Assembly: GCF_044704955.1 (NCBI RefSeq)
Contig: NC_091999.1
Span: forward strand, 61,566,001 to 61,630,000
Reading direction: 5' to 3'
DNA from: Pristiophorus japonicus
Taxonomy: Eukaryota
Length of the DNA stretch: 64,000 nucleotides
Position numbers and translations under genes: made by a program
The notes under the pieces: generated by a model
Database searches by the model: none
What the model saw: the letters and a program-made list of their open reading frames with translations, nothing else
Told to the model about the DNA's origin: nothing
Part shown: positions 1 to 64,000 of the stretch, piece after piece
How the letters are laid out: each line of letters starts with the position of its first letter
How positions within the stretch are numbered: the first letter of the stretch is position 1

Positions 1-299
1 CTTGAAGGGGATCGCTTCATGTCTCATCACACAGGAGTAAGAGGCGCCGCTGGCCCACTCCTCGGCTGCAATGGATAGCAGGCTGTAGATGAAGAAGGAG
101 CTGCTGCCGTTCTCCGCCATCACCTCGGTGTTCTTGTAGTTGCCGGAATCTATCGGCTTGTCATTGATGGTCCATTTGACGAAGATCTCTTGGGGGGATA
201 AACCTCTCATTAAGCAGTTGAAGGTAAAGAAAGTTTGAACGGAGACTTCTTCTGCCGAGGGCAGGAGGACAGACACGGCCAGTTCCCGCGGATCTTTAG
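1..299 (-). CDS. IGHM: IgM heavy chain Cmu4 exon, cluster 1 (runs off the window edge; open as far as visible, but upstream exons are broken)
   Basis: Acceptor ttctgcag|ct at 301-300. Phase-1 translation [99 protein letters not shown]; both C1-set Cys and the Trp are present; matches shark Cmu4. Confidence 0.95.
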
Positions 300-784
300 C
301 TGCAGAACAATTATTTAAAAGTCAATAAACTGGATAATTCCAGAGACAAAGGAACCGGTGGTTAGATGTGAGAGAAATGTGCTTTGCGCTGATTTTTAAA
401 GGATTCCCTTTTCCCCCTCTGTGGCCTGTCTGGCTTTGCAGCACGGAGCAGAGGGGGATGCAATCCTTCTCTCTGGGTCCTTTAGGAGTCGGACTGGAAA
501 ATAACATAGCATTTTCTTCCCAACTGGTCATTATCGTTGTTTATGCTCCAAACGAGCCTCGTCCAGCTAATTTTATCCAACACAAATAAAATATATTTCC
601 CTTTTTCCCTCATGGATTTATCCAGATTCCACTTAAGTGCATAATTTCGGGTCCAGTCGGATTATTTAGTGGAATTACCATTTCAATTATCAGAGCAATC
701 CATTAACACACTTAATAGAGCCAATTAGCACATGCACGGAAATAGTCAGAGCGTCTCACTTGTTGCTACAATTTCTCCGCTCAT

Positions 785-1074
785 CCTTTTCCTTGTGGAT
801 GGAATCTCTTATAGTCGCTATAATAATGGTGCCTCATCACGGAGCAGAACTCAACACCGCTTAGCCAGGTTTGTTTCGAGATGTTTATGTTGCTGATCAC
901 ACTGTTGCGAGCTTCGCCAACTTCGACGGCAATCTTTGATTTCCAAGTTTCCTTTTCTCGAGTCCTGGATACTTTGATTCCATAAGGACCATTAGACACG
1001 ACACAGGATAATGTCTCAAGTAAGACCTGTTCTACTGACGGTTGCAGAAGAGTGATTTCTGCATTGGATATATT
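785..1074 (-). pseudogene. IGHM: IgM Cmu3 pseudo-exon, cluster 1
   Basis: [36 protein letters not shown]...[16 protein letters not shown]...IRDSIHKEK. There is an 8-nt deletion near the start relative to cluster 2, the core Trp is Arg, there is a 3' frameshift, and the donor reads AT (aagg|atgag). Confidence 0.92.
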
Positions 1075-1805
1075 CTGTGAAGCAGAAATATAAATCAAGC
1101 CAAGCTTCATCTTCACAATCAGGGTAACAGCATGCAGCCTTCATTCCCCCAAGAAGAATAAATCACCTTTGAGATATCAAGCACTCGCTGTCGCTTAAAC
1201 AAATCGTTATTGGAAGGACAACAGATTGGCAACGTGCCCGGGAGAATCTTTCAAATTTTTTGTGTGTTTACATCCAGAGCCACCTGTAATGTGCTGTGAA
1301 GCAAATACCCGGCGTAAAACATTAAATACATTCATGCACAATAGTGTTACGAACTGAATAGCGCTCCTCCCGAAAACCCTTGTTCCATTACGCCCGACTA
1401 AAGATCCTTGTGCCCAAACGTTATCACCGTTCTAAAAATGACTCTGCCCCAGGTTCAAGAGCTCAACACGAAACGTACACTGGCTCAAAACGAATAACAA
1501 ATCCAACTCAGGATTTTAGAATCGAAACGAAATACAGTTAATATCCTGGTGTCTTGTGATTTTTGGGGCGATGAAAATGTACAAGCAGCACTTGCAGCCC
1601 CCATCCAAGGAGAAAGGTCGGGAGAATGGCATTCCAAGGGGTCTTTTGTGTTTGGGAATCATTTGTAATGTTGGTGTGAAGTAGTTTTTTCATTTCTATC
1701 ATTAGTGAGCCTTTATCATGCCTTGTTAAAGAGTGTCAGAAGGAAATATGAATTTCAGTCCATCAAGCCTGTTCCTCCATTCAATTAGTTCTTGGATGAC
1801 CTGCA

Positions 1806-2016: not shown

Positions 2017-2018
2017 AC

Positions 2019-2028
2019 TGGCGACGAG
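2019..2028 (+). promoter_or_regulatory. Primer-binding site, probably tRNA-Ser(GCU)
   Basis: TGGCGACGAG is complementary to the ...CUCGUCGCCA 3' end of vertebrate tRNA-Ser(GCU). Confidence 0.75.
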
Positions 2029-6002: not shown

Positions 6003-6211
6003 TGCTGTGCATCTGTAAAGCATGCACTCCCATGTTCCGCCACCAGGGAGCGCATCCCCAGAAGACCCAAGGGATCCCAGCATCCCTTGAGAGCACTGTA
6101 TATAAGCTGGCCCCGAAGGTCTGTTACTCACTCTGGATTGTCTTAATAAAGACTGAGGTCACTGTTACTTTAACCTTCCTCTGAAGTCTCATCTGTGTCA
6201 GGAACACAATA
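6003..6211 (+). repeat. 3' LTR
   Basis: Direct repeat of 1806-2016; preceded by the polypurine tract. Confidence 0.93.
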
Positions 6212-18294: not shown

Positions 18295-19182
18295 NNNNNN
18301 NNNNNNNNNNNNNNNNNNNNNNNNNNNNNNNNNNNNNNNNNNNNNNNNNNNNNNNNNNNNNNNNNNNNNNNNNNNNNNNNNNNNNNNNNNNNNNNNNNNN
18401 NNNNNNNNNNNNNNNNNNNNNNNNNNNNNNNNNNNNNNNNNNNNNNNNNNNNNNNNNNNNNNNNNNNNNNNNNNNNNNNNNNNNNNNNNNNNNNNNNNNN
18501 NNNNNNNNNNNNNNNNNNNNNNNNNNNNNNNNNNNNNNNNNNNNNNNNNNNNNNNNNNNNNNNNNNNNNNNNNNNNNNNNNNNNNNNNNNNNNNNNNNNN
18601 NNNNNNNNNNNNNNNNNNNNNNNNNNNNNNNNNNNNNNNNNNNNNNNNNNNNNNNAACATATAGAGAGAGTTGTTGATATAAGTTAAGAAATTAAGACAA
18701 ATAGAGCTCTATGTAGATTATAGGGCAGACTGATAGATAGAAAGATATTGATGCATTGAACAATTTGGTTGATTGATAAAAGTTCAATCTGAAAGATTAG
18801 AACAAGAATGTGAATGGACGGATATCTGAATTATTTTGAATAAAACCCTTTCTCTTTTTGTAGTTCGGATTAAGAATGTAGAAAATGCTGAGCTTTATCA
18901 TCAGGGTATGGAAATCTTATTGTGTACTGACAGCTGATCTACTGCACCGTGGCAGTGGGGACCAGTCATATACAAATGTAGTGAGAGGAAGTCACTGCTG
19001 AAAATCTCTGTGTTGACTGACACCGGATCTAATTTGAATATTTGTCGCACTGTAATAACATAGCTGAGGACCATTGGCCTACCCAGTTCCCCAATAGGTG
19101 GGGGTCAACTGTACCCCGTCTATCTCTATCGAATTTTACCCCAGAAATCACATCCAATTGGGGTGGCGGGAGGAAATGGGAG

Positions 19183-19400: not shown

Positions 19401-20229
19401 TCTATCTATCGATCTATCTCCCAATCTNNNNNNNNNNNNNNNNNNNNNNNNNNNNNNNNNNNNNNNNNNNNNNNNNNNNNNNNNNNNNNNNNNNNNNNNN
19501 NNNNNNNNNNNNNNNNNNNNNNNNNNNNNNNNNNNNNNNNNNNNNNNNNNNNNNNNNNNNNNNNNNNNNNNNNNNNNNNNNNNNNNNNNNNNNNNNNNNN
19601 NNNNNNNNNNNNNNNNNNNNNNNNNNNNNNNNNNNNTCTATCTCTCGATCATGCTTTTCTCTCACCATCTCCCATTGCAAATTGCTACATCAACATTTTT
19701 CATTCAATTGTGCATTATTAAATGTAGTTGTAGTTGCTGAGACTCACTACGAGGCCACTTCGTTTCTACTGTCTCGATCCCAAATGTGTTGCCATTTTAA
19801 GTATATGAAAACAAATTGCATGCATCAATTTGACCTGGGCAACGCCACGAGCAATCTGCTGCTGAATATCGGAAGTCACGAGCGAACCTCGGACTACTGG
19901 ACCTCATTGCTGGTGACGTACTGTAACGTTTCCGGCGACTCCAAGCCAGCAGTGGTGCTTCACATGCAGTTTGCATACGGTAGATCTAGTTATGGGACCA
20001 AATAATTCACTGATGGAAGACGATAAAATTTAAGACATGCTGTGTGTAGACAGGGCGGGGAGGCAATAGGAAGGCATTAGTCTTTCGGGATGGTATATGG
20101 TTAGAATTGATGTGGGGACTTGATTTTACCGAGTCTCCACCCATGTTCCTCAATTGGAAAACAGCGACTGCATGGAGCAGGTCCATGTGCTTTTTCCCTT
20201 CCTTCATGATGGATCAGTGGGAATTGTTT

Positions 20230-22985: not shown

Positions 22986-25419
22986 CTGACGCCTTGAGCA
23001 GAGAGGATTACGTGGAGACTTGATAGTGGTCTTCAATATTAGACAAGATATCGATAGAGTAAATAAAACTGAACAGTTTCCACTGGAGGAAGGATCGTAA
23101 CCAGGCAATATCGATTTAAGTTAATCGGTATTAAAAGAGATGGCAAATTAGGAGGCATTTTTGTGCAGTGCGATATTGTGACAGGGTATGCACTGTCTGA
23201 GAGGGAGGTGGAAGCAGTTTTTATTAGTAACCTTCATAATTACCTTGATATATTCTTCAAAAATAAAGATGTAAATGGCTATGGGGCAAGATTAGTACTA
23301 ATTGAACTGCCCCGTAGTAGTTCAGTATTCATTAAGATTTCCATCTCCTGACATTATATTATTACAAACTCTGACACCCCGTCCCAACCTTCAGTAGTTC
23401 AAGTGTCTGTACTCACTGATATTCAATTCTCTGCCCCACCCCCTCCAACCACCATGATTTGTCTACATATTTTAGTCAAATCGCTCACTACTTTTTATCA
23501 GGTTTCACTACACAAGGCAACCCCCCCCCACCCCCACCCCTCCACCCCTTCCGCATTATATTATTACGGTCCCGGGACCAGTCCTAAACTGCTGTAGATC
23601 AGACGTCAGTACAGAGGGAGATCACCAGCTCCTGTCCCCCTTTCTCAATTATATTATTACAGACTCTGGTACCCAATGCCACGTTGCTATAGATCAGATG
23701 CCACTGCACGTTGAGATTTCCATACCCTCATGTTGACAAAGAGCCTTTTCCATTTTCTTAACACGAACAGCAAACAAACATTCATTCACCATGGCAATCT
23801 ATCCATCTGTACTCAAGGCTACTCATTAGTCTCTTAAAATATTAAAATGATTTGTGAAAAGTATTATCGATCTATCTGCATCACTGTACCGTTCTCTGTA
23901 TCTGACTGTCTGTCTGTCTGCATGTCAACCTATATATTGAACTATCTGTCATAATTTATATCAACAACATTCACTATATGTTTGTATATATGTNNNNNNN
24001 NNNNNNNNNNNNNNNNNNNNNNNNNNNNNNNNNNNNNNNNNNNNNNNNNNNNNNNNNNNNNNNNNNNNNNNNNNNNNNNNNNNNNNNNNNNNNNNNNNNN
24101 NNNNNNNNNNNNNNNNNNNNNNNNNNNNNNNNNNNNNNNNNNNNNNNNNNNNNNNNNNNNNNNNNNNAACTGTCTATCTATCGATATGTCTGTCTGTCCA
24201 TTTACGATTGGAATAAAATGATGAATATTCATAATTGCCCGGATTTAGACGGGCTGATGATGGTGTCTGCACAGCGTGCGCCGTCGTAAGTCCTCAGAAT
24301 GGGTCCGCAACTTCTGACTTTCCATATGCGCTGCGCATGCACGTAAATCCCGGAAGTTCCGATCTGTCAAGATTCATCTTTATTGATCATCTGCGATCAC
24401 CCCGAAAACACTCTTCCTTGTGCAGGGCCCAACTGCGCCCCACCGAATGCCCCTGAAACATTTTAAATGCTTAATAAAAGGGACTTTTCATTCATTTGGA
24501 ACTGGGGATTCGTTATTTTTATTAGAATTGTGTTTTATTGAGAGATTTCTCACAAGCTTATGGGAATTTATTTTGTAATTGGAAGCCCCATAAGGTAATG
24601 GTGATTCCCTCTATTTAATTGGTTGGGCTGGCCCAGCCAGGTGATCCCAGGAATGCTTCCGAACCGCCTGCTTCCCTGGGATCCATTGGCCTTTATGCAG
24701 ATATATGCATTGAGTCCGAAGACCTGAAGACTCCAAAGCTCCAGAGACACCAATTTATTTTCGTGTCGCTGGCGTACTCCGGGTGTATGCCTCAGACCTC
24801 AAATTCAGGACCCATATATCTATCTATAATATCATAGAAATCTTATATCTTTGCGATCTTTGTGCGAACTTCTCGCATTTTATGTTCCTATCTCTACATT
24901 TATAATGGAAACTGCTTATGCAAACGTGCCACGCTTTGATTACACTCTCCCGATAGCGGTGGCGCTGGAGTGCCTCAGTTTTGCATCTCCAGCCTTCCCC
25001 GCCTCGACAGCAAGCAATGCCCGATTTTCGATACAAATCTACTTCTCTCCTTCCCAAAATACACTAACTCTTGTTATTTACCTAAAGGTAATAACATGAA
25101 ACCAAAACATAATATAATGAAACGAATGCAGCATGTATAACTTTAAAATGGAGAAGACTTATTTCTGCAATTATTTCTGGTCTAATTCTCCCGCAGCTTT
25201 CCAACCCCATTTATACTGAGCACTAGACTTGTTTTTTGCGCCCTATATAAAATGCCAGGTGAGTTCCACTTGTAATCATCTAAAGCAACAATAATGCTTG
25301 TATCAGGCAGTAAAATATATTCTAATTTACAATTCTGGTGCATTCATGTCCCACACATCAAGAGTCCAATTAAAAGGACCTCAAAAACCCAATTTCTGGC
25401 ATTATACAGGCGGACGCAC

Positions 25420-40510: not shown

Positions 40511-40870
40511 AATAGCAATGCAGGTCATGAAAAGTGCGTTGCCATAAAGATTGATTAGACGCAAGAGGGCACTGACATCACGGAATTACTCCATAATCTG
40601 CTTCCAAGGATAAATTGCATAAGAGAAAGTATAGAGACCAGGATAATCAAGAAGTCGGTGATCATTAAATCCAGAAGGAGGACATCACTTGCTTGTGAGA
40701 CCTTCTTCATTCGTACGATGTGCCACAGTGCACTTGAGGTCCCGGTAATGCCCGATACAAGCACTAATACAAGGAAACAGGGAAGGACGATGGTTTTGTT
40801 CTGTGCCACTTCGTCATAGGCGTTGTCCATCGAGGGCCCAGTCTGATTGGATGAGTTGATCTCCGACCCT
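40511..40870 (-). pseudogene. Class A P2Y-type GPCR pseudogene, N-terminal half (TM1-TM3); true start codon uncertain
   Basis: NSSNQT sequons; VLPCFLVLVLVSGITGTSSALW (TM1); LLLDLMITDFL (TM2); after a frameshift, LINLYGNALFMTCIAI (TM3). Confidence 0.88.
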
Positions 40871-41039
40871 GATCTGTTGACTTGCGTTCCAACTCTCAAA
40901 ACTAACCATTTGATGTTGTGGCAAATAATAAAGAGCAACCGATCAAAATATGGGGTAAATTAAAGATATATTCTCCAAAAACAGTTGATACTGCAATGTA
41001 AGGTTATTTGTTGTTGAAGTTATCAGTTGCTTCTCCACC

Positions 41040-43210: not shown

Positions 43211-43621
43211 NNNNNNNNNNNNNNNNNNNNNNNNNNNNNNNNNNNNNNNNNNNNNNNNNNNNNNNNNNNNNNNNNNNNNNNNNNNNNNNNNNNNNNNNNN
43301 NNNNNNNNNNNNNNNNNNNNNNNNNNNNNNNNNNNNNNNNNNNNNNNNNNNNNNNNNNNNNNNNNNNNNNNNNNNNNNNNNNNNNNNNNNNNNNNNNNNN
43401 NNNNNNNNNNNNNNNNNNNNNNNNNNNNNNNNNNNNNNNNNNNNNNNNNNNNNNNNNNNNNNNNNNNNNNNNNNNNNNNNNNNNNNNNNNNNNNNNNNNN
43501 NNNNNNNNNNNNNNNNNNNNNNNNNNNNNNNNNNNNNNNNNNNNNNNNNNNNNNNNNNNNNNNNNNNNNNNNNNNNNNNNNNNNNNNNNNNNNNNNNNNN
43601 NNNNNNNNNNNNNNNNNNNNN

Positions 43622-44499: not shown

Positions 44500-44930
44500 T
44501 TACCTATCTACCGAGCTATTTGTGTGCCCTATCAATATCTATCTTTCAGTCTGTCGATATATCTATAGATTCTTCTAGCCCTCTTTGTCTATCTGTCTAA
44601 CTATCTATCTGTTAGTAAGTCTGTCAGTCTGTCTATCAGTCTGTCTGTCGGTATGTCTGTCTATCTATCTATGTATGTATCAGTCGATCTATGCAACTAT
44701 CAATCTATTTGGCTGTCTGTCTATCTTTCTATCTGCCTAGCTGGCAGATTATCCCTCTCTCNNNNNNNNNNNNNNNNNNNNNNNNNNNNNNNNNNNNNNN
44801 NNNNNNNNNNNNNNNNNNNNNNNNNNNNNNNNNNNNNNNNNNNNNNNNNNNNNNNNNNNNNNNNNNNNNNNNNNNNNNNNNNNNNNNNNNNNNNNNNNNN
44901 NNNNNNNNNNNNNNNNNNNNNNNNNNATCT
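44500..44930. repeat. (TCTA/TCTG)n simple repeat next to an N block
   Basis: Seen directly in sequence. Confidence 0.85.
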
Positions 44931-50086: not shown

Positions 50087-50991
50087 CTAACTTGGTGATA
50101 ATTGTGATCCTGTCCCGAGGAAAGTGCGGTCTTTCCAGATGTATCACTTAGTACCTGCTGTCCATGGCAGTGGCAGATCTCCTGGTCATTATCACCGCTG
50201 TGATATTAAACCGGATCATTGGAATTTATTTTCAATTTAGTCTGCTGTCCACTACTCCAGGCTGTACTATAACATCTATCCTAATTTATGTAGCCACGGA
50301 TAGTTCCATCTGGTTAACAGTCGCTTTCACCTTCGATCGATTTGTGGCGATATGATGCCAGAAACTGAAAACAAAATATTGCACTGAGAAAAGTGCAGCT
50401 CTGATTATAGTCATGGTCGGTGCCCTGGCTGTTTAAAAAAACATCACTTCTTATCTCACTTATGAACCTATGTTCATAACTGACAATGCCCCATGGTTAT
50501 GTAACATCAAAGTAATATTTTATCGTTCTCCTCTATGGATAGTATATGAATGGCTTGACAGAATTTTAACGCCATGACTTTCTCCTGATATTGCTGCTCA
50601 ATGCTCTGACCGTCAGACATATTCTAGCGACGAGCAGAGTCCGCAGAAGGCTCCGGGCCCACAGCAATGGAGAGAATCAAAGCGACCCAGAGTTGGAGAG
50701 CCGGAGAAAATTAATCGTTTTACACTTTACCATCTCGGGCAGTTTCATCCTATTATGACAGTGTACGTTGTAAATTTCTTGTATGTCCGAATTACAAAGA
50801 ATAATTATTTCTCAGGTTCCAATTTCAAAGACCCAAAATGTATTCTCCAAGAAACCGGAAATAGTCTTCAGCTTTTGAGTTCCTGCACAAACACGTGTAT
50901 TTATTCAGTGATCCAGAGTAAATTCAGAGAGGAGTTAATGGATGCGCTGAAATATCCAATGAATCTCATTATAAAATTAATCAAATTATAA
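50087..50991 (+). pseudogene. GPR139-like GPCR pseudogene, exon 2
   Basis: Acceptor tttcctgcag|ct; NLVIIVILSRGKCGLSRCIT*YLLSMAVADLL...SIWLTVAFTFDRFVAI*CQKLKTKYCTEK...LQLLSSCTNTCIY...KFREEL; multiple stops and frameshifts. Confidence 0.9.
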
Positions 50992-51589: not shown

Positions 51590-52910
51590 GAAAAATAGAG
51601 ACAAAATTTACAGTCACTTGGACAAGTATGGATTAATTAAAGGACGCCAGTATGCAGTTGTTAAAGGTAAATTGTGTTTAAATAACTTGATTGAGTTTTT
51701 TTACGTTGGTAACAGAGAGAGTAGTTGAGGGCAATGCGGTTGATGTGGTATACATGAACTTCCAAAAAGTTGAAGTGCCAGCTAATACGTTTGCCTGCAA
51801 AGTAGAAGCCCATAGAGTAAGAGGGAAAGTTGCAGCATGGGTACCAAATTAGCTGAATGACAGGAAAGAGGGATTAGTGATGAATGGAATGTGTTTCTGA
51901 CTGATATCAGTGTTACCCAGGAGTCTTTATCAGGAACGTTGCTTTTCTTGATATATATTAATGAATTGGACTTGGGTGTACTTGTCTCAATTGCAAAATT
52001 TACAGACGACACAAAACTTAGAAGTATGGTGAACATTGACGCGGACAGTGATAGACTTCAAAAGGGCACCGCAGGCTGTTGGAATGGGCGGATCCGTGGC
52101 AGATGAAATCCAATGCAGAAAAGTGTGAAGTTTAACATTTTGGTAGGAAGAACGAGGAGAAGCAGTATAAATTAAAGGGTACAATCCTAAAGGGGGTGCA
52201 TGAACAGAGAAACCTGGGATACACGTTCACAAATCGTTGAGAGTGGCAGGTTGAGAAAGCAGTTAAAACAACAATCGCCATCCTGGGCTTCATAAATAGA
52301 GGCATAGCGTACCAAAGCATGGAAGTTAAGATAATCCTCTATAAAACACTGGTTCGTGCTCAACTGGATGTTGTATCCAATGCTGTGCATCACACTTTAG
52401 GAAGGATGTGAAGGCCTTCGAGAGAGTGCAGAAAAATTAGAACAATGGTTACAGGGATGAGGGATTAAATTTACGTGCATAGACTGGAGAAGCTGGAGTT
52501 GTTCTCTGGTGCAGTGAACCTTGAGAGGACATTTGATAGAGGTGTTCAAAATCATGAGTGTTCGGGACAGAAAAGACAGGGCGAAACTCTTCCCATTGGA
52601 GGAAGGTTCGAGAACAAGAGGACACAGATTTAAGTGGACTGGCAAAAGAATCAAAGGTGACTTGAGGAATAACTTTTTTATGCAGCGAGTGGTTATGATC
52701 TGGAAAGCACTGCCTGAAAGGATGGTGGTGGCAAGTTCAATCGTAGTTTTCAAAAGGATGTTGGATAGCTAACTAAAGGGGAAAAATGCAGGGCTATGAG
52801 GAAAAGGTGGGGAGTGGGAATAGCTGAGGTGCTCTTGCAGAGTGCGGACAGGGGCTCCACAGGCCGAAATGTGTCAATTTATGCTGTAACCCATTCTATG
52901 ATTCTATGAT
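51590..52910 (+). mobile_element. Older CR1 fragment
   Basis: AKFTDDTKL, FFMQRVV, (attctatg)n tail. Confidence 0.88.
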
Positions 52911-53135
52911 CCTGCACCAGCCACAATATAATGATATGATGGTACGATATGGGCGCTATTACAATGTCACGATCAACACCTTAAAATTTAAATTCTATTT
53001 CCCATTGCAAGCTGCTATACTCAGTAAAGTGAGCAAATGTTTGGCAGGGAGGTATAACAGAAAGTAAAGAAGCATTGCATGCAATTCTTCTCCTGGTAAA
53101 AGGCACCAAATTCTTTAATTGGGTAACAGCATTTG

Positions 53136-54610
53136 ATGGAGTGGAGGGTAGCCAATGTAACCCCACTTTTTAAAAAAGGAGGGAGAGAGAAAACAGGGAA
53201 TTATAGACCGGTCAGCCTGACATCGGTAGTGGGTAAAATGATGGAATCAATTATTAAGGATGTCATAGCAGTGCATTTGGAAAGAGGTGACATGATAGGT
53301 CCAAGTCAGCATGGATTTGTGAAAGGGAAATCATGCTTGACAAATCTTCTGGAATTTTTTGAGGATGTTTCCAGTAGAGTGGATAAGGGAGAACCAGTTG
53401 ATGTGGTATATTTGGACTTTCAGAAGGCGTTCGACAAGGTCCCACACAAGAGATTGATGTGCAAAGTTAGAGCACATGGGATTGGGGGTAGTGTACTGAC
53501 ATGGATTGAGAACTGGTTGTCAGACAGGAAGCAAAGAGTAGGAGTAAATGGGTACTTTTCAGAATGGCAGGCAGTGACTAGTGGGGTACCGCAAGGTTCT
53601 GTGCTGGGGCCCCAGCTGTTTACACTGTACATTAATGATTTAGATGAGGGGATTAAATGTAGTATCTCCAAATTTGCGGATGACACTAAGTTGGGTGGCA
53701 GTGTGAGCTGCGAGGAGGATGCTGTGAGGCTGCAGAGCGACTTGGATAGGTTAGGTGAGTGGGCAAATGCATGGCAGATGAAGTATATTGTGGATAAATG
53801 TGAGGTTATCCACTTTGGTGGTAAAAACAGAGAGACAGACTATTATCTGAATGGTGACAGATTAGGAAAAGGGGAGGTGCAAAGAGACCTGGGTGTCATG
53901 GTACATCAGTCATTGAAGGTTGGCATGCAGGTGCAGCAGGCGGTTAAGAAAGCAAATGGCACGTTGGCCTTCATAGCAAGGGGATTTGAGTACAGTGGCA
54001 GGGAGGTGTTGCTACAGTTGTACAGGGCATTGGTGAGGCCACACCTGGAGTATTGTGTACAGTTTTGGTCACCTAACCTGAGGAAAGACATTCTTGCTAT
54101 TGAGGGAGTGCAGCGAAGGTTCACCAGACTGATTCCCGGGATGGCGGGACTGACCTATCAAGAAAGACTGGATCAACTGGGCTTTTAATCACTGGAGTTC
54201 AGAAGAATGAGAGGGGACCTCATAGAAACATATAAAATTCTGACGGGGTTAGACAGGTTAGATGCAAGAAGAATGTTCCCAATGTTGGGGAAGTCCAGAA
54301 CCAGGGGTCACAGTCTAAGGATAAGGGGTAAGCCATTTAGGACCGAGATGCGGAGGAACTTCTTCACCCAGAGAGTGGTGAACCTGTGGAATTCTCTACC
54401 ACAGAAAGTTGTTGAGGCCAATTCACTAAATATATTCAAAAAGGAGTTAGATGAGGTCCTTACTGCTAGGGGGATCAAGGGGTATGGCGAGAAAGCAGGA
54501 ATGGGGTACTGAAGTTGAATGTTCAGCCATGAACTCATTGAATGGCGGTGCAGGCTAGAAGGGCCGAATGGCCTACTCCTGCACCTATTTTCTATGTTTC
54601 TATGTTTCTA
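53136..54610 (+). mobile_element. Young 5'-truncated CR1 with a 351-aa open RT segment
   Basis: ORF 53133-54188 with NYRPVSLT, GVPQGSVLGP and FADDTKL; one stop before the C-terminus; (ttctatgt)n tail. Confidence 0.97.
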
Positions 54611-54834
54611 ATGTCCTTCTTAATTAGCACAATTTAAACCAGCACAGGGAACACTTACCACAACCTACCTGCGATCGAGATTATTCTGGTGAAATACATC
54701 GGCTATTATGAAGGTAATATATTTTGCCAGAGACGTTTCTCTGCAGATCTCTAAATTGTGACTAAGTTTACCGGTTTAACCATCTCTGGGCTGCAGATGA
54801 CTGGACCTGCAGTTTATTAACGTGCCCTGGCACT
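54611..54834 (+). pseudogene. T-cell receptor Valpha/Vdelta-like V-segment remnant
   Basis: From 54671: AIEIILVKYIGYYEGNIFCQRRFSADL*IVTKFTGLTISGLQMTGPAVY*RALA, matching the shark TCR alpha/delta FR3 pattern RFSAELQ..KFTSLTISGLQLTDSAVYYCAL; directly followed by an RSS. Confidence 0.8.
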
Positions 54835-54873
54835 CACAGTGATGGAACTCAGTTCAACCCTCATACAGAACCT
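54835..54873 (+). promoter_or_regulatory. 23-bp-spacer recombination signal sequence
   Basis: CACAGTG (54835-54841), 23-nt spacer, ACAGAACCT (54865-54873; 6/9 to ACAAAAACC). Confidence 0.82.
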
Positions 54874-55549
54874 CCCGCCACTTTGTAGATCTTGGCTCCG
54901 ACTGCTGAAGTCGTATATAACGGCGGGCAGATCCTGCCACATTGGTTCCTGTGAGCCGACACACACTGAGATGGACCCAAAGGACAGTATCCTGTATGAA
55001 GGGCTCACAATAAACTGATTTCTTGATACTCGTGGCAATGTCCTGCAGAGCCAATCAATTGGGCAGGTTGAGTATCTTAGCGACATGCACGAAGCAGAAG
55101 CCAACTGGTTGCAGCTAAAGTTAATTGTGAGAACAGAATGACAACATTCGCTGGCATCGCCTCGAATCTAGAATCAGAATATTAAGCCTGTGCTGGCACT
55201 TTGAAAGAGCTATCGTATTAGTCCCACTCTTTTCCTAAAGCCCTGCAATTTTCTCCTTTTAGATATTTAACTAATTCCCTTTTTAAAGTTAATATTAATT
55301 CTTTTCCCCACTCTTTCACGTAGTATATTCCTGATCAAACCTGCATCAATAAATTCGGCCCTTTTCACCTCAGGCTCCTTTTCCAATTTGCTTAAATCAG
55401 AAATCAAACATCAGGAAATATGTTTGTCCCTGGTACTAACTTCAACTGAGTTGCGTACCTGGATTCCGTGGATGACGCCATAATCCCTCGCATACATCAT
55501 AGCACAGTGATTGGCTGTTTCTTCGAAGGTGACTGCCGTATCCGTAGGA

Positions 55550-55745
55550 GTTGTTCACTGATTTCACGTTGATAGTATCAGAAGGAATGGCGCAGAGCAG
55601 GAAGACAGAATCCTCAGGGTGATGTTCAGTGAGTTCAGGGAGATGGTATCAGAAGGAATGGAGCAGAGCAGTGAGAACAAATCTGTGGATGATGTTCAGT
55701 GAGTTAAGCGAGATGGTATCAGAGGGAATAGTGCAGAGCAGACAG
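55550..55745 (+). repeat. Short tandem repeat, about 3 units of ~68 bp
   Basis: gatgttcagtgagtt...gatggtatcagaaggaatgg...cagagcag repeated. Confidence 0.75.
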
Positions 55746-55784
55746 AAAGGCAGTCCAGGGAAGAGGTGACAGCGGGTCGTGTTT

Positions 55785-56590
55785 AACGTGAGATCATGCA
55801 CTTTGGCAGAAAAAAATCAAAGAGACCGTTATTATTTAAATGGAAAAAGATTGCAAAGTGCCGCAGTTCAGCGGCACCTGAGGGTACTTGTGCATGAAGC
55901 ACAAAAGGATGATATGCAGGTACAGCGAATGATCAGGAAGGCCATTGGCATCTTGGCCATTATTGTGAAGAGAATGGAGTATAAAAGCAGGGAAGTCTTG
56001 CTAAAGTTATACAGGATATTGGGGAGGCCACACCTGGAACTGTGTGCGGTTTTGGTTTACATATTTATGAAAGGATATACTTGCTTTGGAGGCAGTTCAG
56101 AGAAGGTTCACTCGGATGATTCCGGAGATGAGGGGGTTGACTTATGAGGAAAGGTTGAGTAGTTTGGGCCTCGACTCATTGGAATTCAGAAGAATGAGAA
56201 GTGATCTTATCGAAATGTATCAGATTATGAGGGGGCTTGACAAGGTGGATCCAGAGAGGATGTTTGCACTGATGGGGGAGATTAGAACTGGAGGGCATGA
56301 TCTTAAAATATGGGGCCGCCCAATTAAAACAGAGATGAGGAGAAATTTCCTCTCTAAGAACGTTGTAAATGTCTGGACTTCGCTGCCTCAGAGAGCCGTG
56401 GAAGCTGGGACATTGAATAACCTTAAGATAGAAATAGACAGTGTTTTAAACGATAAGGGGCTATGGGGAGCAGGCAGGAAAGTGGAGCTCAGTCCATTAT
56501 CATAACCGCCATGAATGGCAGAGCAGGCTCGAGGTGCAGTATGGCCTACTCCTGTTCCAATTTCTTATATTCTTATGTTTTTATGTATGT
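55785..56590 (+). mobile_element. CR1 3' fragment
   Basis: RT C-terminal ORFs 55779-56505; ttcttatg tail. Confidence 0.9.
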
Positions 56591-57017
56591 TCCTCATAAT
56601 GGAGAACGGTTGGCAGTGATAACCCTACGCATTTCTGTCCGTATGGACCATATGCATTCAGGTGACCTTTAAAGAGTTGAATCGTAAACGAAACTTACAT
56701 TCTACGAATGCCCTCCCAGAGAGGAGGATGTCAATCATATATTTGGGTAGAACAAAACGACAATGATTTTACATCAGAAATTGATATTGCCCGTGCATCA
56801 CACATTTTGTATGTAGGTGCCCAACGGGCACAAAGCTCCAAATGTACCTGCAGATGCCGCGTGAACTCTCATCTCCTCTCTGTCAAAGAAAATCTCTCCA
56901 CCTGTCGTCACTTTCTTGGCTTTCTATATGTGTATAACAGAAACATTGGAGCGCGTGTCTGTGTGTCAGTTAGGCCCCAGTTTTTGGGAATCATTCCAAG
57001 AGTTTGTGCTCTCTAGT

Positions 57018-57328
57018 GTGTCTGGAAGTGTTTGATGGGACAGTATAGAGTGAGCTTTAATCTGTATTTAACCAGTGCTGCTCCTGACCTGGGTGTGTTT
57101 GATGGGACGGTGTAGAGGGAGATTTATTCTATATTTAACCAGTGCTGTACCTGCCCTGGGAGGGTGTGGTGTGCAAGTGTAGATGGAGCTGTTCTCTGTA
57201 TCTAACCCGTTCTGCACCTGCCCTGGGAGTTTTTGATGGGACAGTGCAGAGGGAGCTTTACTCTTTATCTAACCTGTGTTGTACCTGCCCTGAGAGTGTT
57301 TGTTAGGACAGTGTAGAGGGAGATTTGC
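57018..57328 (+). repeat. ~65-bp minisatellite
   Basis: About 5 units of gggagtgtttgatgggacagtgtagagggagctttactctgtatctaacccgtgctgtacctgccct. Confidence 0.9.
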
Positions 57329-57686
57329 TCTGACACATACTATACTGTATCGGACTATGGTGCATCAGAGGCCTGCTCTTTAATATAACCTGGCACGTGA
57401 AAGGCCATAATATTAGAGGAGACCGCCTGGTCACTGTGCAGTCATTCCGCCTCTGGTGCATGATGTCACAAGGCAGGGGAAAATGTGCCGTCACTCTGAT
57501 GGGACACTAGGTGGCGCAGTGGCTCCTTAACCGAAGGGACTTGGATTCAAAAACATCAGGATAGGACGCGGGAAGAATAAATTTCATGGAAATAAAACAA
57601 CGTGTGATAGGGAAATAGAACAGTGTGAAGGAGCCTTGGAGTAAAGAGTTCAGCAAAGTCCAAATTATTCCATTTGCCATTGCAGT

Positions 57687-57692
57687 TTTATT
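57687..57692 (-). terminator. Candidate poly(A) signal of the membrane IgM form
   Basis: AATAAA about 410 nt downstream of the TM2 stop. Confidence 0.5.
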
Positions 57693-58104
57693 AACAATTT
57701 CACAGAGAACAATTTACAGAGAAGGTTTTCAAATGTTCACACAAATTGAATATAACAAATGAGCGTCACATTAATACCAGAACACAGTCGGTCTGAGCTG
57801 CCAGCTATTTGTACAACTCTAACAGACATCAGGGAGAGAGGAACAGATGTTCAACACCAAGGGAAGTGAATAATTGTGAATCATGAATGATAAAAGTGAC
57901 TTATGTACACATGAGATATTCAAACAATTGTTTGACTCCGAGATACATTTACATTATAGCCACGGTTATCTCACACATTTCAAACAGAGAAATGAAAAAA
58001 TTGAAGGCAATTTACTCCGGGAATCACCAAGAGGACATAATTTATTTTCAAGACACAGTTAACAACCAGAGGAGAAAAATCCACGGCGGCCGAAATTCAG
58101 TCAA

Positions 58105-58113
58105 TCACTTGAC
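58105..58113 (-). pseudogene. IGHM: IgM TM2 exon (VK*), cluster 2
   Basis: tttacag|GTC AAG TGA. Confidence 0.9.
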
Positions 58114-58251
58114 CTGTAAAAGAGGGATAAAAGTTTGAAGCAGCGTTTTAGTGGTTTGGGGCATTAATTTCAGGGTTGTTATCAATGAAACATTTAGAGA
58201 TTTGTCAAACCTCTTCAATCAACTCGAACTGAGTGCATTGAATCTTCTCAC

Positions 58252-58379
58252 CTTCACCGGAGTGATGGCAGCGTTGTAGGAAATGTTCAGGAAGATCAAG
58301 ATGATGAATGTGGAAGCGGTTGTCCAGATGTTGCTGCTCTCGTCCTCATACTCTTCACTCCAGATGTGGTCTGAGGAAT
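58252..58379 (-). pseudogene. IGHM: IgM TM1 exon, cluster 2
   Basis: cgtag|at...(D)SSDHIWSEEYEDESSNIWTTASTFIILIFLNISYNAAITPVK|gtgag; open frame, canonical splice sites. Confidence 0.93.
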
Positions 58380-59019
58380 CTACGGGATGTAGGGGAGGAA
58401 ATATATTCAGATCGTTTGTTAACCCAAGATCTCATCTTATTATTACGTATTCTATTTTCTTTTTTTAAGGTGTTAGATTATTCTCTATTTTAATGTTCAA
58501 TGTATGTCCTGTGTTAAGTTAATCACGCTCAGTAATCTATCTGTGTTTCTAATTCCACAGTCGTTCTTTCTTTATGATTCTTCTGTAGTCGGTTTTGGAA
58601 AATATGACAGTTTTCCTTCAATGTCACAGGCTAATTGATTTTGCATCAATTTCATAGGATTTACCATTCGGGAATAGTATGATGTAATATCGGGGGAACT
58701 ATACTGAATGATATCGATTAATTTAACAATAGCTTCAGATAGCTAATTATTCGGAGACTGTCAAAGGGACAGGGTAAGACATCAGATGTGAGTTATAATC
58801 TGGATTAATTTGTGGTAGTCAAGGTTCTGAACATAATTAATTTGCATGAGTTTCCAACTAAGAACTTTGATTCAGTTTGCGTTCAGGACCAGAATATAGG
58901 AATGTTAGATATTATGGTATCAGAAATGATTTATTTAATACAATCGTTGCAGACTGTCTGTTCAAATAATTTATTTTAATTCTATATTCGTCTGTTACCT
59001 GACGTATTTTTTGCACTTT

Positions 59020-59645
59020 AGTGTTTGTGTTTGTGTGTATGACGATCTCTTCTTTTGGTGTTGTCTGTGTTTGTGTGTTGATGTATGTTGATATGTAAGT
59101 TTGAATGTTTTAATGTGTCATTCCATATATTTGTATTTATGTGTAAGTGTTTGTGTATTTTTGTAAGATTGTGTATGTTTACATGTAAGCCTTTACGTGT
59201 ATATATGCAATTGTTTGTGGTTATGTTTAAATATGTCTATTCTTTGTAAGTACGTTCATGTGCGTGTTTTAATGTGTTTGTGTATGGTTATGTGTACGTG
59301 TTGTGTATGTTTATGGGTAACAATATGTGCAGTTATGTGTAACTGTGTGTGTTCGCATGTAAATGTGTGTGTGTGCTATGCGTTAGTTAATTTGTGTTGA
59401 ATATGTGTTTATGCAAGTGAAAGTGTGTGTGTTTGTGTGTGTGTGTGTGTGTGTCAGTGCTTCTGTTTTATTTAAGGGTGTGTTTATTTTTGCTGTCATA
59501 TTAATGGTGCTGTGGTTCTGACAATGACGGTGTGTATTATATTCTGGGTATGCGTAATATCTTGTGTCAGTGTGTCAATGTGTGTGTTTATGTGTAAGTC
59601 GCTGTGCGTTTATGTGTAAATCCGTGTTGTGTTTATGTGTAAGTG
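59020..59645. repeat. TG-rich simple repeat
   Basis: Seen directly in sequence. Confidence 0.85.
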
Positions 59646-59959
59646 TGAACTTCCACAAAAACATACACTACTAACGTTTCCACGCATTCTTCCTCGCTCT
59701 GTGTAAATGTGTTCATTGTGAGACACAATGTGACATCAGCTGACGGAATGCAACAAATGAATCGATGGGCATCTCTCTCTGGTGACATTGAGGGGTACAA
59801 TGATTTAACAATTGCCCTTTGCCCTCTCGCTTGTGCGGAAGTCGGATACATTGGGTTAACAATTGCAGATTCCCCTCACTATGCTGGGGTAGTGGGCGGG
59901 ACAGTTAGTTAACAATTGCCCTTTCCCCTCTCTCTGGTGGGGGAGAGGGTTTACATCAT

Positions 59960-60510
59960 CAAAGGCAGTCCCTCGCAATCAAGGAAGAATTGCTTCCACT
60001 CTTAGCCTGATTTCTTACGTGGCTGTACAGTCCAATAGGGAACCACAGTCTCTGTCACAGGTGGGAAAGACCGTGGTTGCGGGAAGGGGAAGATTTTACA
60101 CGTTTGCCGCACGTTCCTTCCACTGCCTGCGCTTGATGTCTGAATGCTCTCGGCGACGAGACACGAGGGGCTCAGCGCCCTCCCGGATGTACTTCCTCCC
60201 TTCCTCCATTTAGGACGGTCTTTGGCCAGGGACTCTCAAGTGTCAGTGGGGATGTCGCACTTTATCAGGGAGGCTTTGTGGTCCCTTATAACGTTTCCCC
60301 TGCCCACCTTTGGCTCATTTGCCATGGGCGAGTTCCGAGTCGAGCGCTTGCTTTGGGAGTCTCGTGTCTGGCATGCAGACAATGTGGCCTGCCCAGAGCA
60401 GCTGATCAAGTGTGGTCAGTGCTTCGATGCTGGGATGTTGGCCTGCACGAGGACGCTAATTTTGGCGCGTCTGTCCTGCCAGGGAACTTGTAGAATCTTG
60501 CAGAGACGGA
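59960..60510 (-). mobile_element. RTE LINE 3' fragment inside a ~48-bp minisatellite (59800-59950 and 60515-60720)
   Basis: tggaagcaattcttcctt 3' end like that at 29337; flanking acaattgccctttcccctctctctggtgggg units. Confidence 0.78.
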
Positions 60511-61122
60511 GTGAAGTTACAGTGCATTAACAATTGCCGTTTCCCCTCACTCTGGTGGGGCAGTGGGAAGCACAGTGGGTTCAGAATTGCCATTTCACCA
60601 CTCTTTTGTATGGCAATGGTCTTACAGTGGATGAATAATTGCCCTTTCATCTCTCTCTGGTGGTGTAGTGGAAGGTACAGGGGGATAACAATTTCCATTT
60701 CACCTCTCTCTGGTGGGGCGATGGGAGATTCAGTTCGTGTTCGTGTGTGGACCTCATTTCAGATCCCAGAGTGTGCGATGCTGCCAAAAAAAATTGTCCC
60801 CAAATCTGAAGGGATGGACAACACGAGAAACAAGGGCACCGAAATATAAATGTACAGCATTTGTTTATCGGGAAATAGAACTATGCAGATTCTCTCAGTG
60901 GGACGAAAGTTGCTGAAATGACTTTGAGGTATCCTGTCATTAAAGAGCTTCTCTTTCTCTCCAACCTGTGGTGTATATGAGCTGAGAGCGCTGAATGTAC
61001 CAGCTTTGGCCACAAGTCCGACAAATATTCTGCTTCAGATTAACAGCCCGCCCCTTGGCTAAAATAGGAAACAAAATTAATTGAGCGGCTGTGTGTGTAA
61101 CTCACGATTGGAAGAAAAGGCC

Positions 61123-61128
61123 TTTATT
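61123..61128 (-). terminator. Poly(A) signal of the secretory IgM form
   Basis: AATAAA about 40 nt after the tailpiece stop. Confidence 0.75.
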
Positions 61129-61166
61129 GTTTTTTACTTAAGAACTGAAAGGCAATCGAGAGATTC

Positions 61167-61557
61167 TCATTGATAAGAATTGATGTTGTCCATCAGAGCA
61201 AGGGAAATGTTCACAAAACAGGGTTTACCTCTGAATTTATTGATGGTTCTGTTGGTGATTTTCAAGGAAATCGCTTCATGTCCCACCACACAGGAGTAAG
61301 AGGCGCCGCGGGCCCACTCCTCGGCTGCAATGGATAGCAGGCTGTACATGAAGAAGGAGCTGCTGCCATTCTCCGCCATCACCTCGGTGTTCTGGTAGTT
61401 GTCGGAACCACCGGCTTGTCCTTGACGGTCCATTTGACGAAGATCTCTCGGGTGGAGAATCCTCTCACTAAGCAGGTGAGGCTGACCAACCTCTGAGTAG
61501 AGACTTCTTCTGCCGAGGGCAGGAGGACAGACACGGCTGGTTCCCGTGGATCTTTCG
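61167..61557 (-). pseudogene. IGHM: IgM Cmu4 plus secretory tailpiece, cluster 2
   Basis: ctacag|cg [49 protein letters not shown], then a 1-nt deletion near 61408, then SDNYQNTEV...[24 protein letters not shown] g|gtaaa (internal donor at 61229/61228) [20 protein letters not shown]. Confidence 0.95.
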
Positions 61558-62461
61558 CTGTAGAACAGTTACAATAAAGGCAAATGAACTGGACAGTTCC
61601 AGATACAATGGTGGGAGTTTTAATCTAATAAAGCAGGCGTATTGAGGGTGTGGGGGTGATTAAATTGGTAAAAATCGGCATCCCGACATCAACCCGACCA
61701 CTCCTGGTTGTAATATTGTATTTGAATAATATATTTATAGGAGGCTGGAATCCTCTATTTTAACCTCCATTCGGTTTTTAACTGTAGCTGGTCCGGCTTG
61801 ACACACTGTGTAAATCGCAACAGTTACAGCGATGCGGGGACGGCTGCACCCAGGTGGTTATTGCCCTTACACCTCCCTCCTGGATCCAGGTTCCCTGCCT
61901 AACCCACCCCCCGCGATCCGAGAGCTCCTCACTCGGATTCCAATCCTCCTCTGCTCCCGGCTGGCCTTTGAGACCACCACCAACTCGCTTTCTCTGTTTA
62001 CATTCGCCAATGTCCCGTGGTTGTACGTCAGAGAAATATGCTCTTCGTTGACATTTAACGCTTTATTATTTCCCCTCTGGGGCCTCTCTGGTTTACCATC
62101 CCGCAGCAGAGTGAACATAATCTTTCTCTCTGAAATCTTGAAGGGTTGGAGTTGAATTTACTGCACAGATCAAGGAGATTTGGCCAACTGGTCTATGCTG
62201 GTGTGTATGTTCCACACATGCCTCTTCCTAGCTCACTTAATCTCATCCTAATAACATACCCTTCTATTCCTTTCTCGCTCATGGACTTATCCAGTTTCCC
62301 CTAAAATACATAACATCAGGTCCCAGAGTGCTGAGTTCGTGGAATTACCAAACTGAATGATCAGAGTAGCCCATTAAACACTTTAAATAATGAATTGGCC
62401 CTTGCACATGCAGCAGAAATAGTCACAGTATCTGACTTATTGCAACAATCTCCGCGCTATC

Positions 62462-62768
62462 CCTTTTCCTTGTGGATGGAATCTCTGATAGGAGTGGTAT
62501 ATCCTGATGGCTCACCATCCAGTAGAACTTATCCCCACTCAGCCAGTCTTGTGTCGAGATGTTTAAGTTGCTGATTACGCTGCTGGGATCCTCTCCGTGT
62601 TAGACGGCAATCTCTGATTTCAAAGCCTCCTTTTCTCAGGTCCAGGACACGGTGAGCACAGAAGGAGCATCAGACACGACGCAGTTTAAGGTCACCGTCG
62701 CTCCAGTAAGTCCTGTGCCAGTAACTGTGGGCGAAGAGTGATTTTTGAATCGCTGCATGGGACATCCA
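62462..62768 (-). pseudogene. IGHM: IgM Cmu3 pseudo-exon, cluster 2
   Basis: ttgcag|tg DVPCSDSKITLRP...[78 protein letters not shown]; two stops, frameshifts, second Cys changed to Trp, donor lacks GT. Confidence 0.93.
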
Positions 62769-63078
62769 CTGCAAAACAGGAATGAAAGTCAGGAAAAGCT
62801 GCATCTTCAGAATCCGGACACCAATTTTTAGCCTTAACTCGTTCAAGGGGGATAAATCACTTTTGAGATATCAACCTCACGCTGCTGCTTTAACACCGGC
62901 GTTATTGGAAGGACAATGTATTGGCAACGATTCCGGGAGATCTGTAACATTTCCTGTGTATTTGAAGCCAGAGCCACCTGTAATGGGCTGTGAAGCAAAT
63001 AACCGGCGTAAAACGGGAATACATTGTGGTGCTATTGTGTTAGGCACTGAAGAGCGCTCATCCTGAAATTCCTTGCTG

Positions 63079-64000
63079 CTTCAACATTCAGGAAGGATAG
63101 AATAAAAGGAAAAGGAGGTGGGGTAGCATTGCTGGTTAAGGAGGAGATTAAGGCAATAGTTAGGAAGGACATTAGCTTGGATGATGTGGAATCTATATGG
63201 GTAGAGCTGCAGAACACCAAAGGGCAAAAAACGTTAGTGGGAGTTGTGTACAGACCTCCAAACAGTAGTAGTGATGTTGGGGAGGGCATCAAACAGGAAA
63301 TTAGGGGTGCGTGCAATAAAGGTGCAGCAGTTATAATGGGTGACTTTAATATGCACATAGATTGGGCTAACCAAACTGGAAGCAATACGGTGGAGGAGGA
63401 TTTTATGGAGTGCATAAGAGATGGTTTTTTAGACCAATAAGTCGAGGAACCAACTAGCGGGGAGGCCATCTTCGACTGGGTGTTATGTAATGAGAGAGGA
63501 TTAATTAGCAATCTCGTTGTGCGAGGCCCCTTGGGGAAGAGTGACCATAATATGGTGGAATTCTGCATTGGGATGGAGAATGAAACAGTTAATTCAGAGA
63601 CCATGGTCCAGAAGTTAAAGAAGGCTAACTTTGAAGGTATGAGGCGTGAATTGGCTGGGATGGATTGGCGAATGATACTTAAGGGGTTGACTGTGGATGG
63701 GCAATGGCAGACATTTAGAGATCGCATGGATGAACTACAACAATTGTACATTCCTGTCTGGCATAAAAGTAAAAAAGGGAAGGTGGCTCAACCGTGGCTA
63801 TCAAGGGAAATCAGGGATAGTATTAAAGCCAACGATGTGGCATACAAATTGGCCAGAAATAGCAGCGAACCTGGGGACTGGGAGAAATTTAGAACTCAGC
63901 AGAGGAGGACAAAGGGTTTGATTGGGGCAGGGAAAATGGAATATGAGAAGAAGCTTGCAGGGAACATTAAGACGGATTGCAAAAGTTTCTATAGATATGT
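63079..64000 (+). mobile_element. Young CR1 (endonuclease region), runs off the window edge
   Basis: Near-identical to about 11920-12840; GDFN and SDHN motifs; in-frame stop. Confidence 0.95.

What the first reader, a model, noticed from the sequence alone, without database searches (positions are those of the whole stretch)
54611..54873. TCR Valpha/delta-like segment with a 23-RSS between two IgM heavy-chain clusters
Seen: a plus-strand frame absent from the ORF track reads RRFSADL*IVTKFTGLTISGLQMTGPAVY*RALA and ends at CACAGTG-23 nt-ACAGAACCT. It lies about 3.2 kb from, and convergent with, the IgM TM2 exon. Known: this FR3 pattern (ending in YYCAL) is TCR alpha/delta-type rather than IgH V, and sharks make chimeric IgHV-TCRdelta rearrangements. 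Inference: IgM clusters and TCR alpha/delta V segments are, or were, physically interleaved here, either inside or at the edge of the TCR alpha/delta locus or as a co-duplicated orphan block. That would give a cis route for exchanging V segments between B- and T-cell receptor loci. This copy itself is dead (two stops, YYC lost, WYRQ region apparently deleted).
Basis: partly seen in the sequence, partly recalled or inferred. Interest (0 to 1): 0.85.

Follow-up and report, generated by a model that had tools for sequence, protein, structure and literature searches.

The report
Dead V-segment relic behind IgM cluster
A short, broken remnant of an antigen-receptor variable (V) gene segment, still carrying its recombination signal, lies tail-to-tail 3.2 kb behind a decayed shark IgM antibody gene; such T-cell-receptor-type V pieces between shark antibody gene clusters were published in 2025, so this dead copy is one more example of a known arrangement.

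Summary
The site lies 3.23 kb from, and convergent with, the TM2 exon of a minus-strand IgM cluster. A second IgM cluster sits at the window start.

The signal alone is at chance level. Joined to an in-frame FR3-like peptide (6 of 9 conserved V landmarks) it occurred in 0.25% of simulated windows.

No database search could confirm the V type. The stop-free pieces (38 and 21 aa) hit nothing in Pfam, PDB or 1.84 billion representatives.

Three things point to a TCR alpha/delta (or gamma) type V rather than VH or IgL:
- the motifs LTISGL and AVY..AL,
- the 23-nt spacer,
- the absence of any D or J relic downstream.

This typing is inferred, not shown.

The segment is dead and single-copy: no paralogue at 80% identity or more appears in this animal's read contigs. 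A LINE abuts its 5' side.

Flajnik et al. 2025 (PMC12227049) already report TCR alpha/delta-type V exons between IgH clusters in elasmobranchs. The scan's first readers noted the same adjacency at ten or more other places in this genome, none checked. Verdict: a new, dead member of a known kind; low to moderate interest.

The parts
54731..54834 (+). FR3-like remnant of a V exon (RRFSADL ... LTISGLQ ... AVY*RALA). It has TAA stops at 54752-54754 and 54818-54820, and Arg (CGT 54821-54823) in place of the second Cys. D98 is Gly.
   Evidence: 6 of 9 FR3 landmarks
54653..54730 (+). Possible, uncertain remains of FR1 end, CDR1 and CDR2 (TGC at about 54671, LFW in another frame, KYIGYYEGN). About 30 codons are missing compared with a normal V exon.
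   Evidence: read by eye only; no statistical support
54835..54873 (+). Recombination signal sequence: heptamer CACAGTG (7/7), 23-nt spacer, nonamer ACAGAACCT (6/9)
53136..54610 (+). 5'-truncated CR1-like LINE copy whose 3' tail abuts the V-like stretch. It either cut off or displaced the 5' part of the V gene (leader, FR1).
   Evidence: read depth
58041..58379 (-). IgM cluster B membrane exons: TM1 58379-58252, TM2 with stop 58113-58105, AATAAA 58046-58041
61170..62788 (-). IgM cluster B CH4 (1-nt frameshift between 61401 and 61414) and CH3 (in-frame stop, Cys to Trp). This cluster is a pseudogene.
1..1140 (-). IgM cluster A CH4 (1-321, runs off the window) and CH3 (784-1140), both open

Best explanation
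This is a solitary, decayed relic of a rearranging antigen-receptor V gene segment. What survives is the FR3 region and the 23-nt-spacer recombination signal. It is most like the TCR alpha/delta (possibly gamma) type of V. It lies tail-to-tail 3.2 kb behind a decayed IgM minicluster in the elasmobranch region where IgH clusters and TCR alpha/delta-type V exons are interspersed. It does nothing now. It has two stops, has lost the second Cys and Asp98, lacks about 30 codons, and has no leader; a LINE sits directly on its 5' side. An intact ancestor would have been a 23-RSS V. Being inverted relative to the IgM cluster, that ancestor could have joined only by inversion to a 12-RSS partner in that cluster, or by deletion to partners further along the plus strand. 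Shown: the sequence features, the IgM context, single-copy status and inactivity. Inferred: V origin (p about 0.003 against chance), the TCR type, and the history.
For: Sequence and frame are. The joint FR3-landmark and RSS test gives p about 0.0025 per window. IgM cluster B TM1, TM2 and poly(A) signal are mapped, and 3,232 bp separate TM2 from the RSS. The C-mu identity of the neighbours rests on hits named immunoglobulin C mu 4 and on C1-set matches. No D or J relic and no further RSS lies on the plus strand between 54874 and 58200, so this is not a minicluster V-D-J remnant. The end motifs resemble nurse shark TCR delta V ends printed in PMC5931798 Table 7: deltaV7 LTITGL, deltaV3 AVYHCAL, gammaV1 TATYYCAL, whereas beta V ends read AVYFCA or AVYYCAC. 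[quoted passage not shown] No other coding reading was found: the minus-strand ORFs over the site have no Pfam match. The stretch is not a dispersed repeat, because read depth is single-copy at 80% likeness or more.
Against: No database search recognises the pieces as V-set: Pfam, PDB, 1.84 billion representatives and the ESM Atlas were all blank. The RSS alone is at chance level. Four of the most conserved residues (D98, S/T99, Y/F103, C104) are not there. The landmark test was designed after seeing the sequence. No tree was built. Motif resemblance cannot separate alpha/delta from gamma, nor from the 'intermediate' V types the 2025 paper mentions. No TCR D, J or C lies in the window.
Confidence: 0.58

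Rival explanations
1. It is a V relic, but of an immunoglobulin or intermediate type: a VH or TAILV-like V, the leftover V of a lost inverted IgM/IgW cluster, or a light-chain V.
For: The FR3 length from RF to the Cys position (29 residues) fits VH as well as TRAV/TRDV, and shark VH also starts FR3 with RF(T/S)A (my own knowledge). VH carries a 23-RSS. [quoted passage not shown] LTISGLQ is also a common light-chain motif (my own knowledge).
Against: The end reads ..AL A and not the ..AR or ..AK of VH; turning AGA into CTG needs three changes. The L-T-I-S-G-L-Q pattern is unlike the VH L-x-M-x-S-L pattern. No D or J relics lie within 3.3 kb downstream, although shark Ig miniclusters keep them within about 1 kb. 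Kappa- and sigma-type V use a 12-RSS, and shark lambda is reported as germline-joined (PMC12227049).
Confidence: 0.22
2. It is a chance resemblance: unique intergenic DNA that happens to hold an RSS-like string after an FR3-like reading frame.
For: RSS-like strings are expected 0.78 times per window. The two stop-free pieces that make up the V-like frame get no hit in any protein search. The canonical D-x-A-x-Y-Y-C is mostly absent.
Against: The joint occurrence has p about 0.0025 per window. It sits in a window with two IgM clusters, in a genome region where such V segments are published and repeatedly noted by the scan. The match extends beyond the nine landmarks (RFSA.L, K85, LTIS.LQ, AL after the Cys position, 11 nt to the heptamer).
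Confidence: 0.1
3. It is the decayed copy of a fixed component of the IgM cluster repeat unit: an inverted V that trails C-mu and was co-duplicated with each cluster.
For: First-reader notes in the same genome describe the same geometry elsewhere: s1-874710 (inverted, 3.3 kb behind an IgM constant gene), s1-877850 (about 3 kb), and s1-877229, s1-874796 and s1-877226 ('facing' an IgM constant gene). All are unchecked.
Against: At 80% likeness or more the V-like stretch is single-copy, while the IgM TM region 57400-58450 shows 2-8 times single-copy depth. Recognisable paralogy between clusters therefore stops about 0.6 kb past the poly(A) signal, 2.5 kb short of the V relic. Cluster A's 3' flank is outside the window, so no second case could be examined.
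Confidence: 0.25

Closest known systems
TCR alpha/delta-type V exons lying between IgH miniclusters in the elasmobranch antigen-receptor complex (Flajnik et al. 2025, Sci Adv, PMC12227049)
   Same: A lone V exon of non-VH appearance with a 23-RSS lies between IgM clusters in a cartilaginous fish. Its placement has the same implication for Ig-TCR trans-rearrangement.
   Different: [quoted passage not shown] This genome is another elasmobranch (called a sawshark by another agent's note, which I did not check). This copy is a heavily decayed pseudogene whose type I could not verify. The paper's text held here gives no orientation or distance relative to C-mu.
TAILV / VH-delta: Ig-like V segments inside the TCR delta locus (nurse shark, frog, birds, monotremes)
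   Same: Both mix Ig-type and TCR-type segments in one chromosomal neighbourhood.
   Different: It is the mirror case: there an Ig-like V sits among TCR segments and is expressed. Here a TCR-like V sits among Ig clusters and is dead.
Inverted V segment behind the constant gene (human TRDV3 behind TRDC, TRBV30 behind TRBC2)
   Same: The V lies downstream of a constant gene in opposite orientation with a 23-RSS. This geometry permits joining by inversion.
   Different: The constant gene here is C-mu of an Ig minicluster, both V and C are pseudogenes, and no rearranged product is known.
Orphon or relic V pseudogenes of mammalian IG/TR loci
   Same: It is a truncated V with stops, a lost Cys and a partly preserved RSS.
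   Different: It is not translocated away from antigen-receptor genes; it lies inside the receptor gene region.

Membership tests
Rearranging antigen-receptor V gene segment | RSS (CACAGTG, 12- or 23-nt spacer, A-rich nonamer) directly after the V coding end | tested here: met
   Heptamer 7/7, spacer 23, nonamer 6/9, 11 nt after the Cys-position codon. The RSS alone is at chance level.
Rearranging antigen-receptor V gene segment | V-domain landmarks: C23, W41, hydrophobic 89, D98, Y102, C104 | tested here: not met
   L89, I91, A100, Y102, R75 and F76 are present. D98, residue 103 and C104 are lost. C23 and W41 are only guessable in other frames. This is consistent with a relic, not with a gene.
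Rearranging antigen-receptor V gene segment | Significant sequence similarity to V-set domains | tested here: inconclusive
   The pieces of 38 and 21 aa gave no hit in Pfam, PDB or 1.84 billion representatives. Such short pieces have little power. The joined read-through has no reference and was left out.
Rearranging antigen-receptor V gene segment | Leader exon, short intron and an open V exon | tested here: not met
   There are two stops. A LINE occupies 53136-54610 directly upstream, and no leader is recognisable at 52910-53135.
TCR alpha/delta V (TRAV/TRDV) | Groups with TRAV/TRDV in a V-domain tree | not testable with these tools
TCR alpha/delta V (TRAV/TRDV) | FR3 and end motifs of the type RF(S/T)A.L ... 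LTI(S/T).L ... Y.CAL, with a 23-RSS | tested here: met
   RRFSADL, LTISGLQ and AVY*RAL compare with nurse shark deltaV7 LTITGL and deltaV3 AVYHCAL in PMC5931798 Table 7. However, gammaV1 also ends YYCAL.
TCR alpha/delta V (TRAV/TRDV) | Lies upstream of, and co-oriented with, TCR D/J/C segments | tested here: not met
   No J-like (FGxG or WGxG) or RSS-flanked segment lies on the plus strand at 54874-58200, and no TCR C is seen in the window.
Shark IgM minicluster (neighbours) | C-mu exons CH3, CH4, TM1 and TM2 in order on one strand | tested here: met
   tblastn of shark C-mu fragments, C1-set matches, and splice sites and stop read directly.

The most novel reading that the evidence does not exclude
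In this genome an inverted TCR delta-like V with a 23-RSS about 3.2-3.3 kb behind C-mu may be a regular part of the IgM minicluster unit. That is the same V(D)J-C-inverted V topology as TRDV3 behind TRDC and TRBV30 behind TRBC2. It would argue that IgH miniclusters and the TCR delta/beta cassettes descend from one cassette. It would also mean intact copies can join by inversion to the 12-RSS D/J of the IgM cluster they trail, putting TCR-type V domains on IgM heavy chains.
Probability: 0.12. Interest if true: 0.7.

Novelty: new member of a known kind. Interest (0 to 1): 0.24.

Why it matters
On its own it matters little: it is one more dead V relic. It does show that the mixing of TCR-type V segments with IgM clusters, published in 2025 for four elasmobranchs, also holds in this genome. 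It also shows that such V segments decay together with their IgM neighbours. The one point worth following is the geometry. The V is inverted, 3.2 kb behind C-mu, and the scan's first readers report the same at several other IgM clusters of this genome. If that proves regular, it bears on how Ig and TCR loci are related and on whether TCR-type V domains can be used by IgM.

Tried and rejected
1. I searched the two stop-free pieces apart (54638-54751, 38 aa; 54755-54817, 21 aa) and a frame-3 piece. Pfam, PDB, the 1.84-billion representative library and the ESM Atlas gave nothing usable. This is low power, not evidence against a V origin.

5. I looked for paralogues through read contigs at 80% likeness or more. 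There are none for the V-like stretch. Continuity from 54.9 to 58.1 kb could not be tested, because the short-read contigs break at the LINE (55790-56593) and at a repeat (57000-57400). The window has no N between 44927 and 64000.

6. I searched for an intact V elsewhere in the window (YxC, WYRQ and RSS scans) and found none.

7. I looked for the missing 5' half of the V upstream of the LINE (52910-53135). Nothing convincing turned up.

8. I looked for reference sequence files on the script machine and found none.

9. A first simulation timed out and was rerun faster.

10. Runs X5 and X6, of unknown kind, have no contig on the V-like stretch. That is no proof that it is silent.

Full report
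**What is there**

After ...LVKYIGYYEGNIFCQ come RRFSADL, a TAA stop (54752-54754) and IVTKFTGLTISGLQMTGPAVY. Then follow a second TAA (54818-54820) and RALA.

The codon where a V domain has its second cysteine is CGT (Arg, 54821-54823). Eleven bases later comes a perfect heptamer CACAGTG (54835-54841). It is followed by a spacer of exactly 23 nt and the nonamer ACAGAACCT (54865-54873, 6/9 to consensus).

The other two frames hold a TGC and an LFW. These could be the remains of the first Cys and of Trp41. However, only about 50 codons separate that Cys from the second-Cys position, instead of about 81. Either some 30 codons are gone, or the stretch upstream of RRFSADL is not V-derived at all.

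**Context**

Stop-free stretches were compared with shark proteins by a homology search. Its hits included 'immunoglobulin C mu 4' of Carcharhinus plumbeus and Chiloscyllium punctatum fragments. Pfam C1-set matches and tblastn complete the map of two minus-strand IgM clusters.

- Cluster A has CH4 at 1-321 and CH3 at 784-1140, both open.
- Cluster B has CH3 at 62495-62788, with an in-frame stop and Cys to Trp.
- Cluster B CH4 is at 61170-61558, with a 1-nt frameshift between 61401 and 61414.
- Cluster B TM1 is at 58379-58252, and TM2 (GTC AAG TGA) at 58113-58105.
- AATAAA lies at 58046-58041.

A 5'-truncated CR1-like LINE (53136-54610) ends exactly where the V-like stretch begins. No intact V, D or J is present anywhere in the window. 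No D/J relic follows the RSS on the plus strand up to 58.2 kb.

**Is it more than chance?**

The RSS alone is not. The 39-nt pattern with up to 3 mismatches occurs twice in the window against 0.78 expected.

I then scored nine standard conserved FR3 positions: 75 R/K, 76 F/Y/V/I/L, 89 and 91 hydrophobic, D98, A/G100, Y102, Y/F/L103 and C104. The site scores 6/9, a level reached by only 14 of 127,822 positions in the window.

In 2,000 first-order Markov windows, an RSS-like site preceded within 0-20 nt by such a position occurred 5 times (0.25%). I chose the landmarks after seeing the sequence, so this is an approximate figure. Even so, given the IgM context, I take a V origin as likely (about 0.85-0.9).

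**What kind of V?**

This could not be settled.

- The two stop-free pieces (38 and 21 aa), searched apart, gave nothing in Pfam, PDB, 1.84 billion representatives or the ESM Atlas.
- The search for homologous proteins needs at least 40 aa.
- The joined read-through has no reference and was left out.

What remains is motif-level evidence. The end ..AVYAL A and the core LTISGLQ resemble nurse shark TCR delta V ends printed in Table 7 of PMC5931798: deltaV3 AVYHCAL and deltaV7 LTITGL. GammaV1 also ends TATYYCAL, while beta V ends read AVYFCA or AVYYCAC.

From my own knowledge, RF(S/T)A.L followed by L-T-I-S-x-L-Q and CAL is typical of TRAV/TRDV (for example human TRDV1). VH ends in CAR or CAK and has L-x-M-x-S-L. 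Kappa- and sigma-type V use a 12-RSS.

The absence of D/J relics within 3.3 kb also fits a solitary, translocon-style V better than an Ig minicluster V. I put TCR alpha/delta (or gamma) type at about 0.6-0.65 overall.

**Copies and reads**

Four DNA runs of one sample hold the stretch. I laid contigs of two of them, and of two small runs of unknown kind, at 80% likeness or more.

- The V-like stretch (54718-55119) has single-copy depth (33 and 63). It is covered by one contig (54609-55638) that differs from the window at 6 of 1,030 positions.
- The IgM TM region (57400-58450) shows 2-8 times that depth, from paralogous clusters.
- So there is no close paralogue of this V relic. Recognisable paralogy between IgM clusters ends about 0.6 kb beyond the poly(A) signal.
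- No contig bridges the LINE at 55790-56593 or the repeat at 57000-57400.
- The two small runs show nothing on the V-like stretch, which proves nothing.

**What is known**

Flajnik et al. [quoted passage not shown] They use this proximity to explain Ig-TCR trans-rearrangements, TAILV and NARTCR.

The present copy adds a dead example in another elasmobranch.

**Earlier notes of this scan**

These are unchecked first-reader notes and served only as leads. At least ten places in the same genome carry notes of TCR alpha/delta-type V segments with 23-RSS beside, behind or facing IgM constant genes. They lie from 44 Mb before to 4.6 Mb beyond this window, and on other pieces. One is described as inverted and 3.3 kb behind an IgM constant gene, and another as about 3 kb away. 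A follow-up note on the same genome calls the animal a sawshark.

So the scan has found this arrangement before on other DNA. The repeated distance and orientation suggest, but do not show, that an inverted V may belong to the IgM cluster unit. That would resemble TRDV3 behind TRDC and TRBV30 behind TRBC2, a parallel that PMC12227049 draws only for the TCR loci. I rate that reading at about 0.12. The single-copy result above neither supports nor excludes it, because older duplicates would fall below 80% identity.

**Verdict**

The feature is a non-functional V-segment relic with a preserved 23-RSS, probably of TCR alpha/delta type, in a published kind of mixed Ig/TCR neighbourhood. It is a new member of a known kind, with interest about 0.24.

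Noticed in passing
window 58041-62788 (-): IgM cluster B is a pseudogene. CH4 has a 1-nt frameshift between 61401 and 61414. CH3 has an in-frame stop and Cys to Trp (KFYW). A LINE lies at 63035-63787 upstream of CH3. Yet TM1 and TM2 splice sites, the stop and AATAAA are intact. I did not check against reads whether the frameshift is real or an assembly error.
   Followed up: partly
window 1-6131: IgM cluster A has open CH3 and CH4. Retroelement pol-like ORFs (1977-6131, both strands) lie where CH2 and CH1 would be expected; one of them tested (3374-3979) gave no Pfam match. No VH, D or J is recognisable anywhere in the window, so cluster A may be V-less or interrupted.
   Followed up: partly
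window 50164-50991 (+) and 40555-40938 (-): Rhodopsin-family GPCR fragments lie between the two IgM clusters: a 7tm_1 match below Pfam's cut-off at 50164-50355 (26.4 bits against 30.5), and a TM7-like ORF at 50755-50991. They are probably a broken GPCR gene or retrocopy. The minus-strand ORF at 40555-40938 looks membrane-protein-like but has no Pfam match.
   Followed up: partly
window 57398-58450: Read-contig depth at 80% likeness or more is 2-8 times single copy. Only a handful of IgM clusters in this animal are that similar to cluster B in the TM and 3' flank region. The similarity stops near 57400, about 0.6 kb past the poly(A) signal.
   Followed up: partly
window 54609-55638: The read-derived contig differs from the assembly at 6 of 1,030 positions (for example 54989, 55338, 55340, 55531), at full depth in both runs. 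This may be the other haplotype or a consensus difference.
   Followed up: no
window 9232-9426, 14801-15101, 18295-18655, 19428-19636, 23994-24167, 43211-43621, 44762-44926: Seven N runs, each flanked by the same kind of simple repeat (it translates as YLSIYLS...). They were left as they are.
   Followed up: no
window 61810 (-) and 58054 (+): Two further RSS-like strings: CACAGTG-22-TTAAAAACC upstream of CH4 of cluster B, and CACAGTT-12-AGAAAAATC near the TM2 poly(A) site. Neither has V-, D- or J-like coding sequence beside it, so both are taken as chance.
   Followed up: partly
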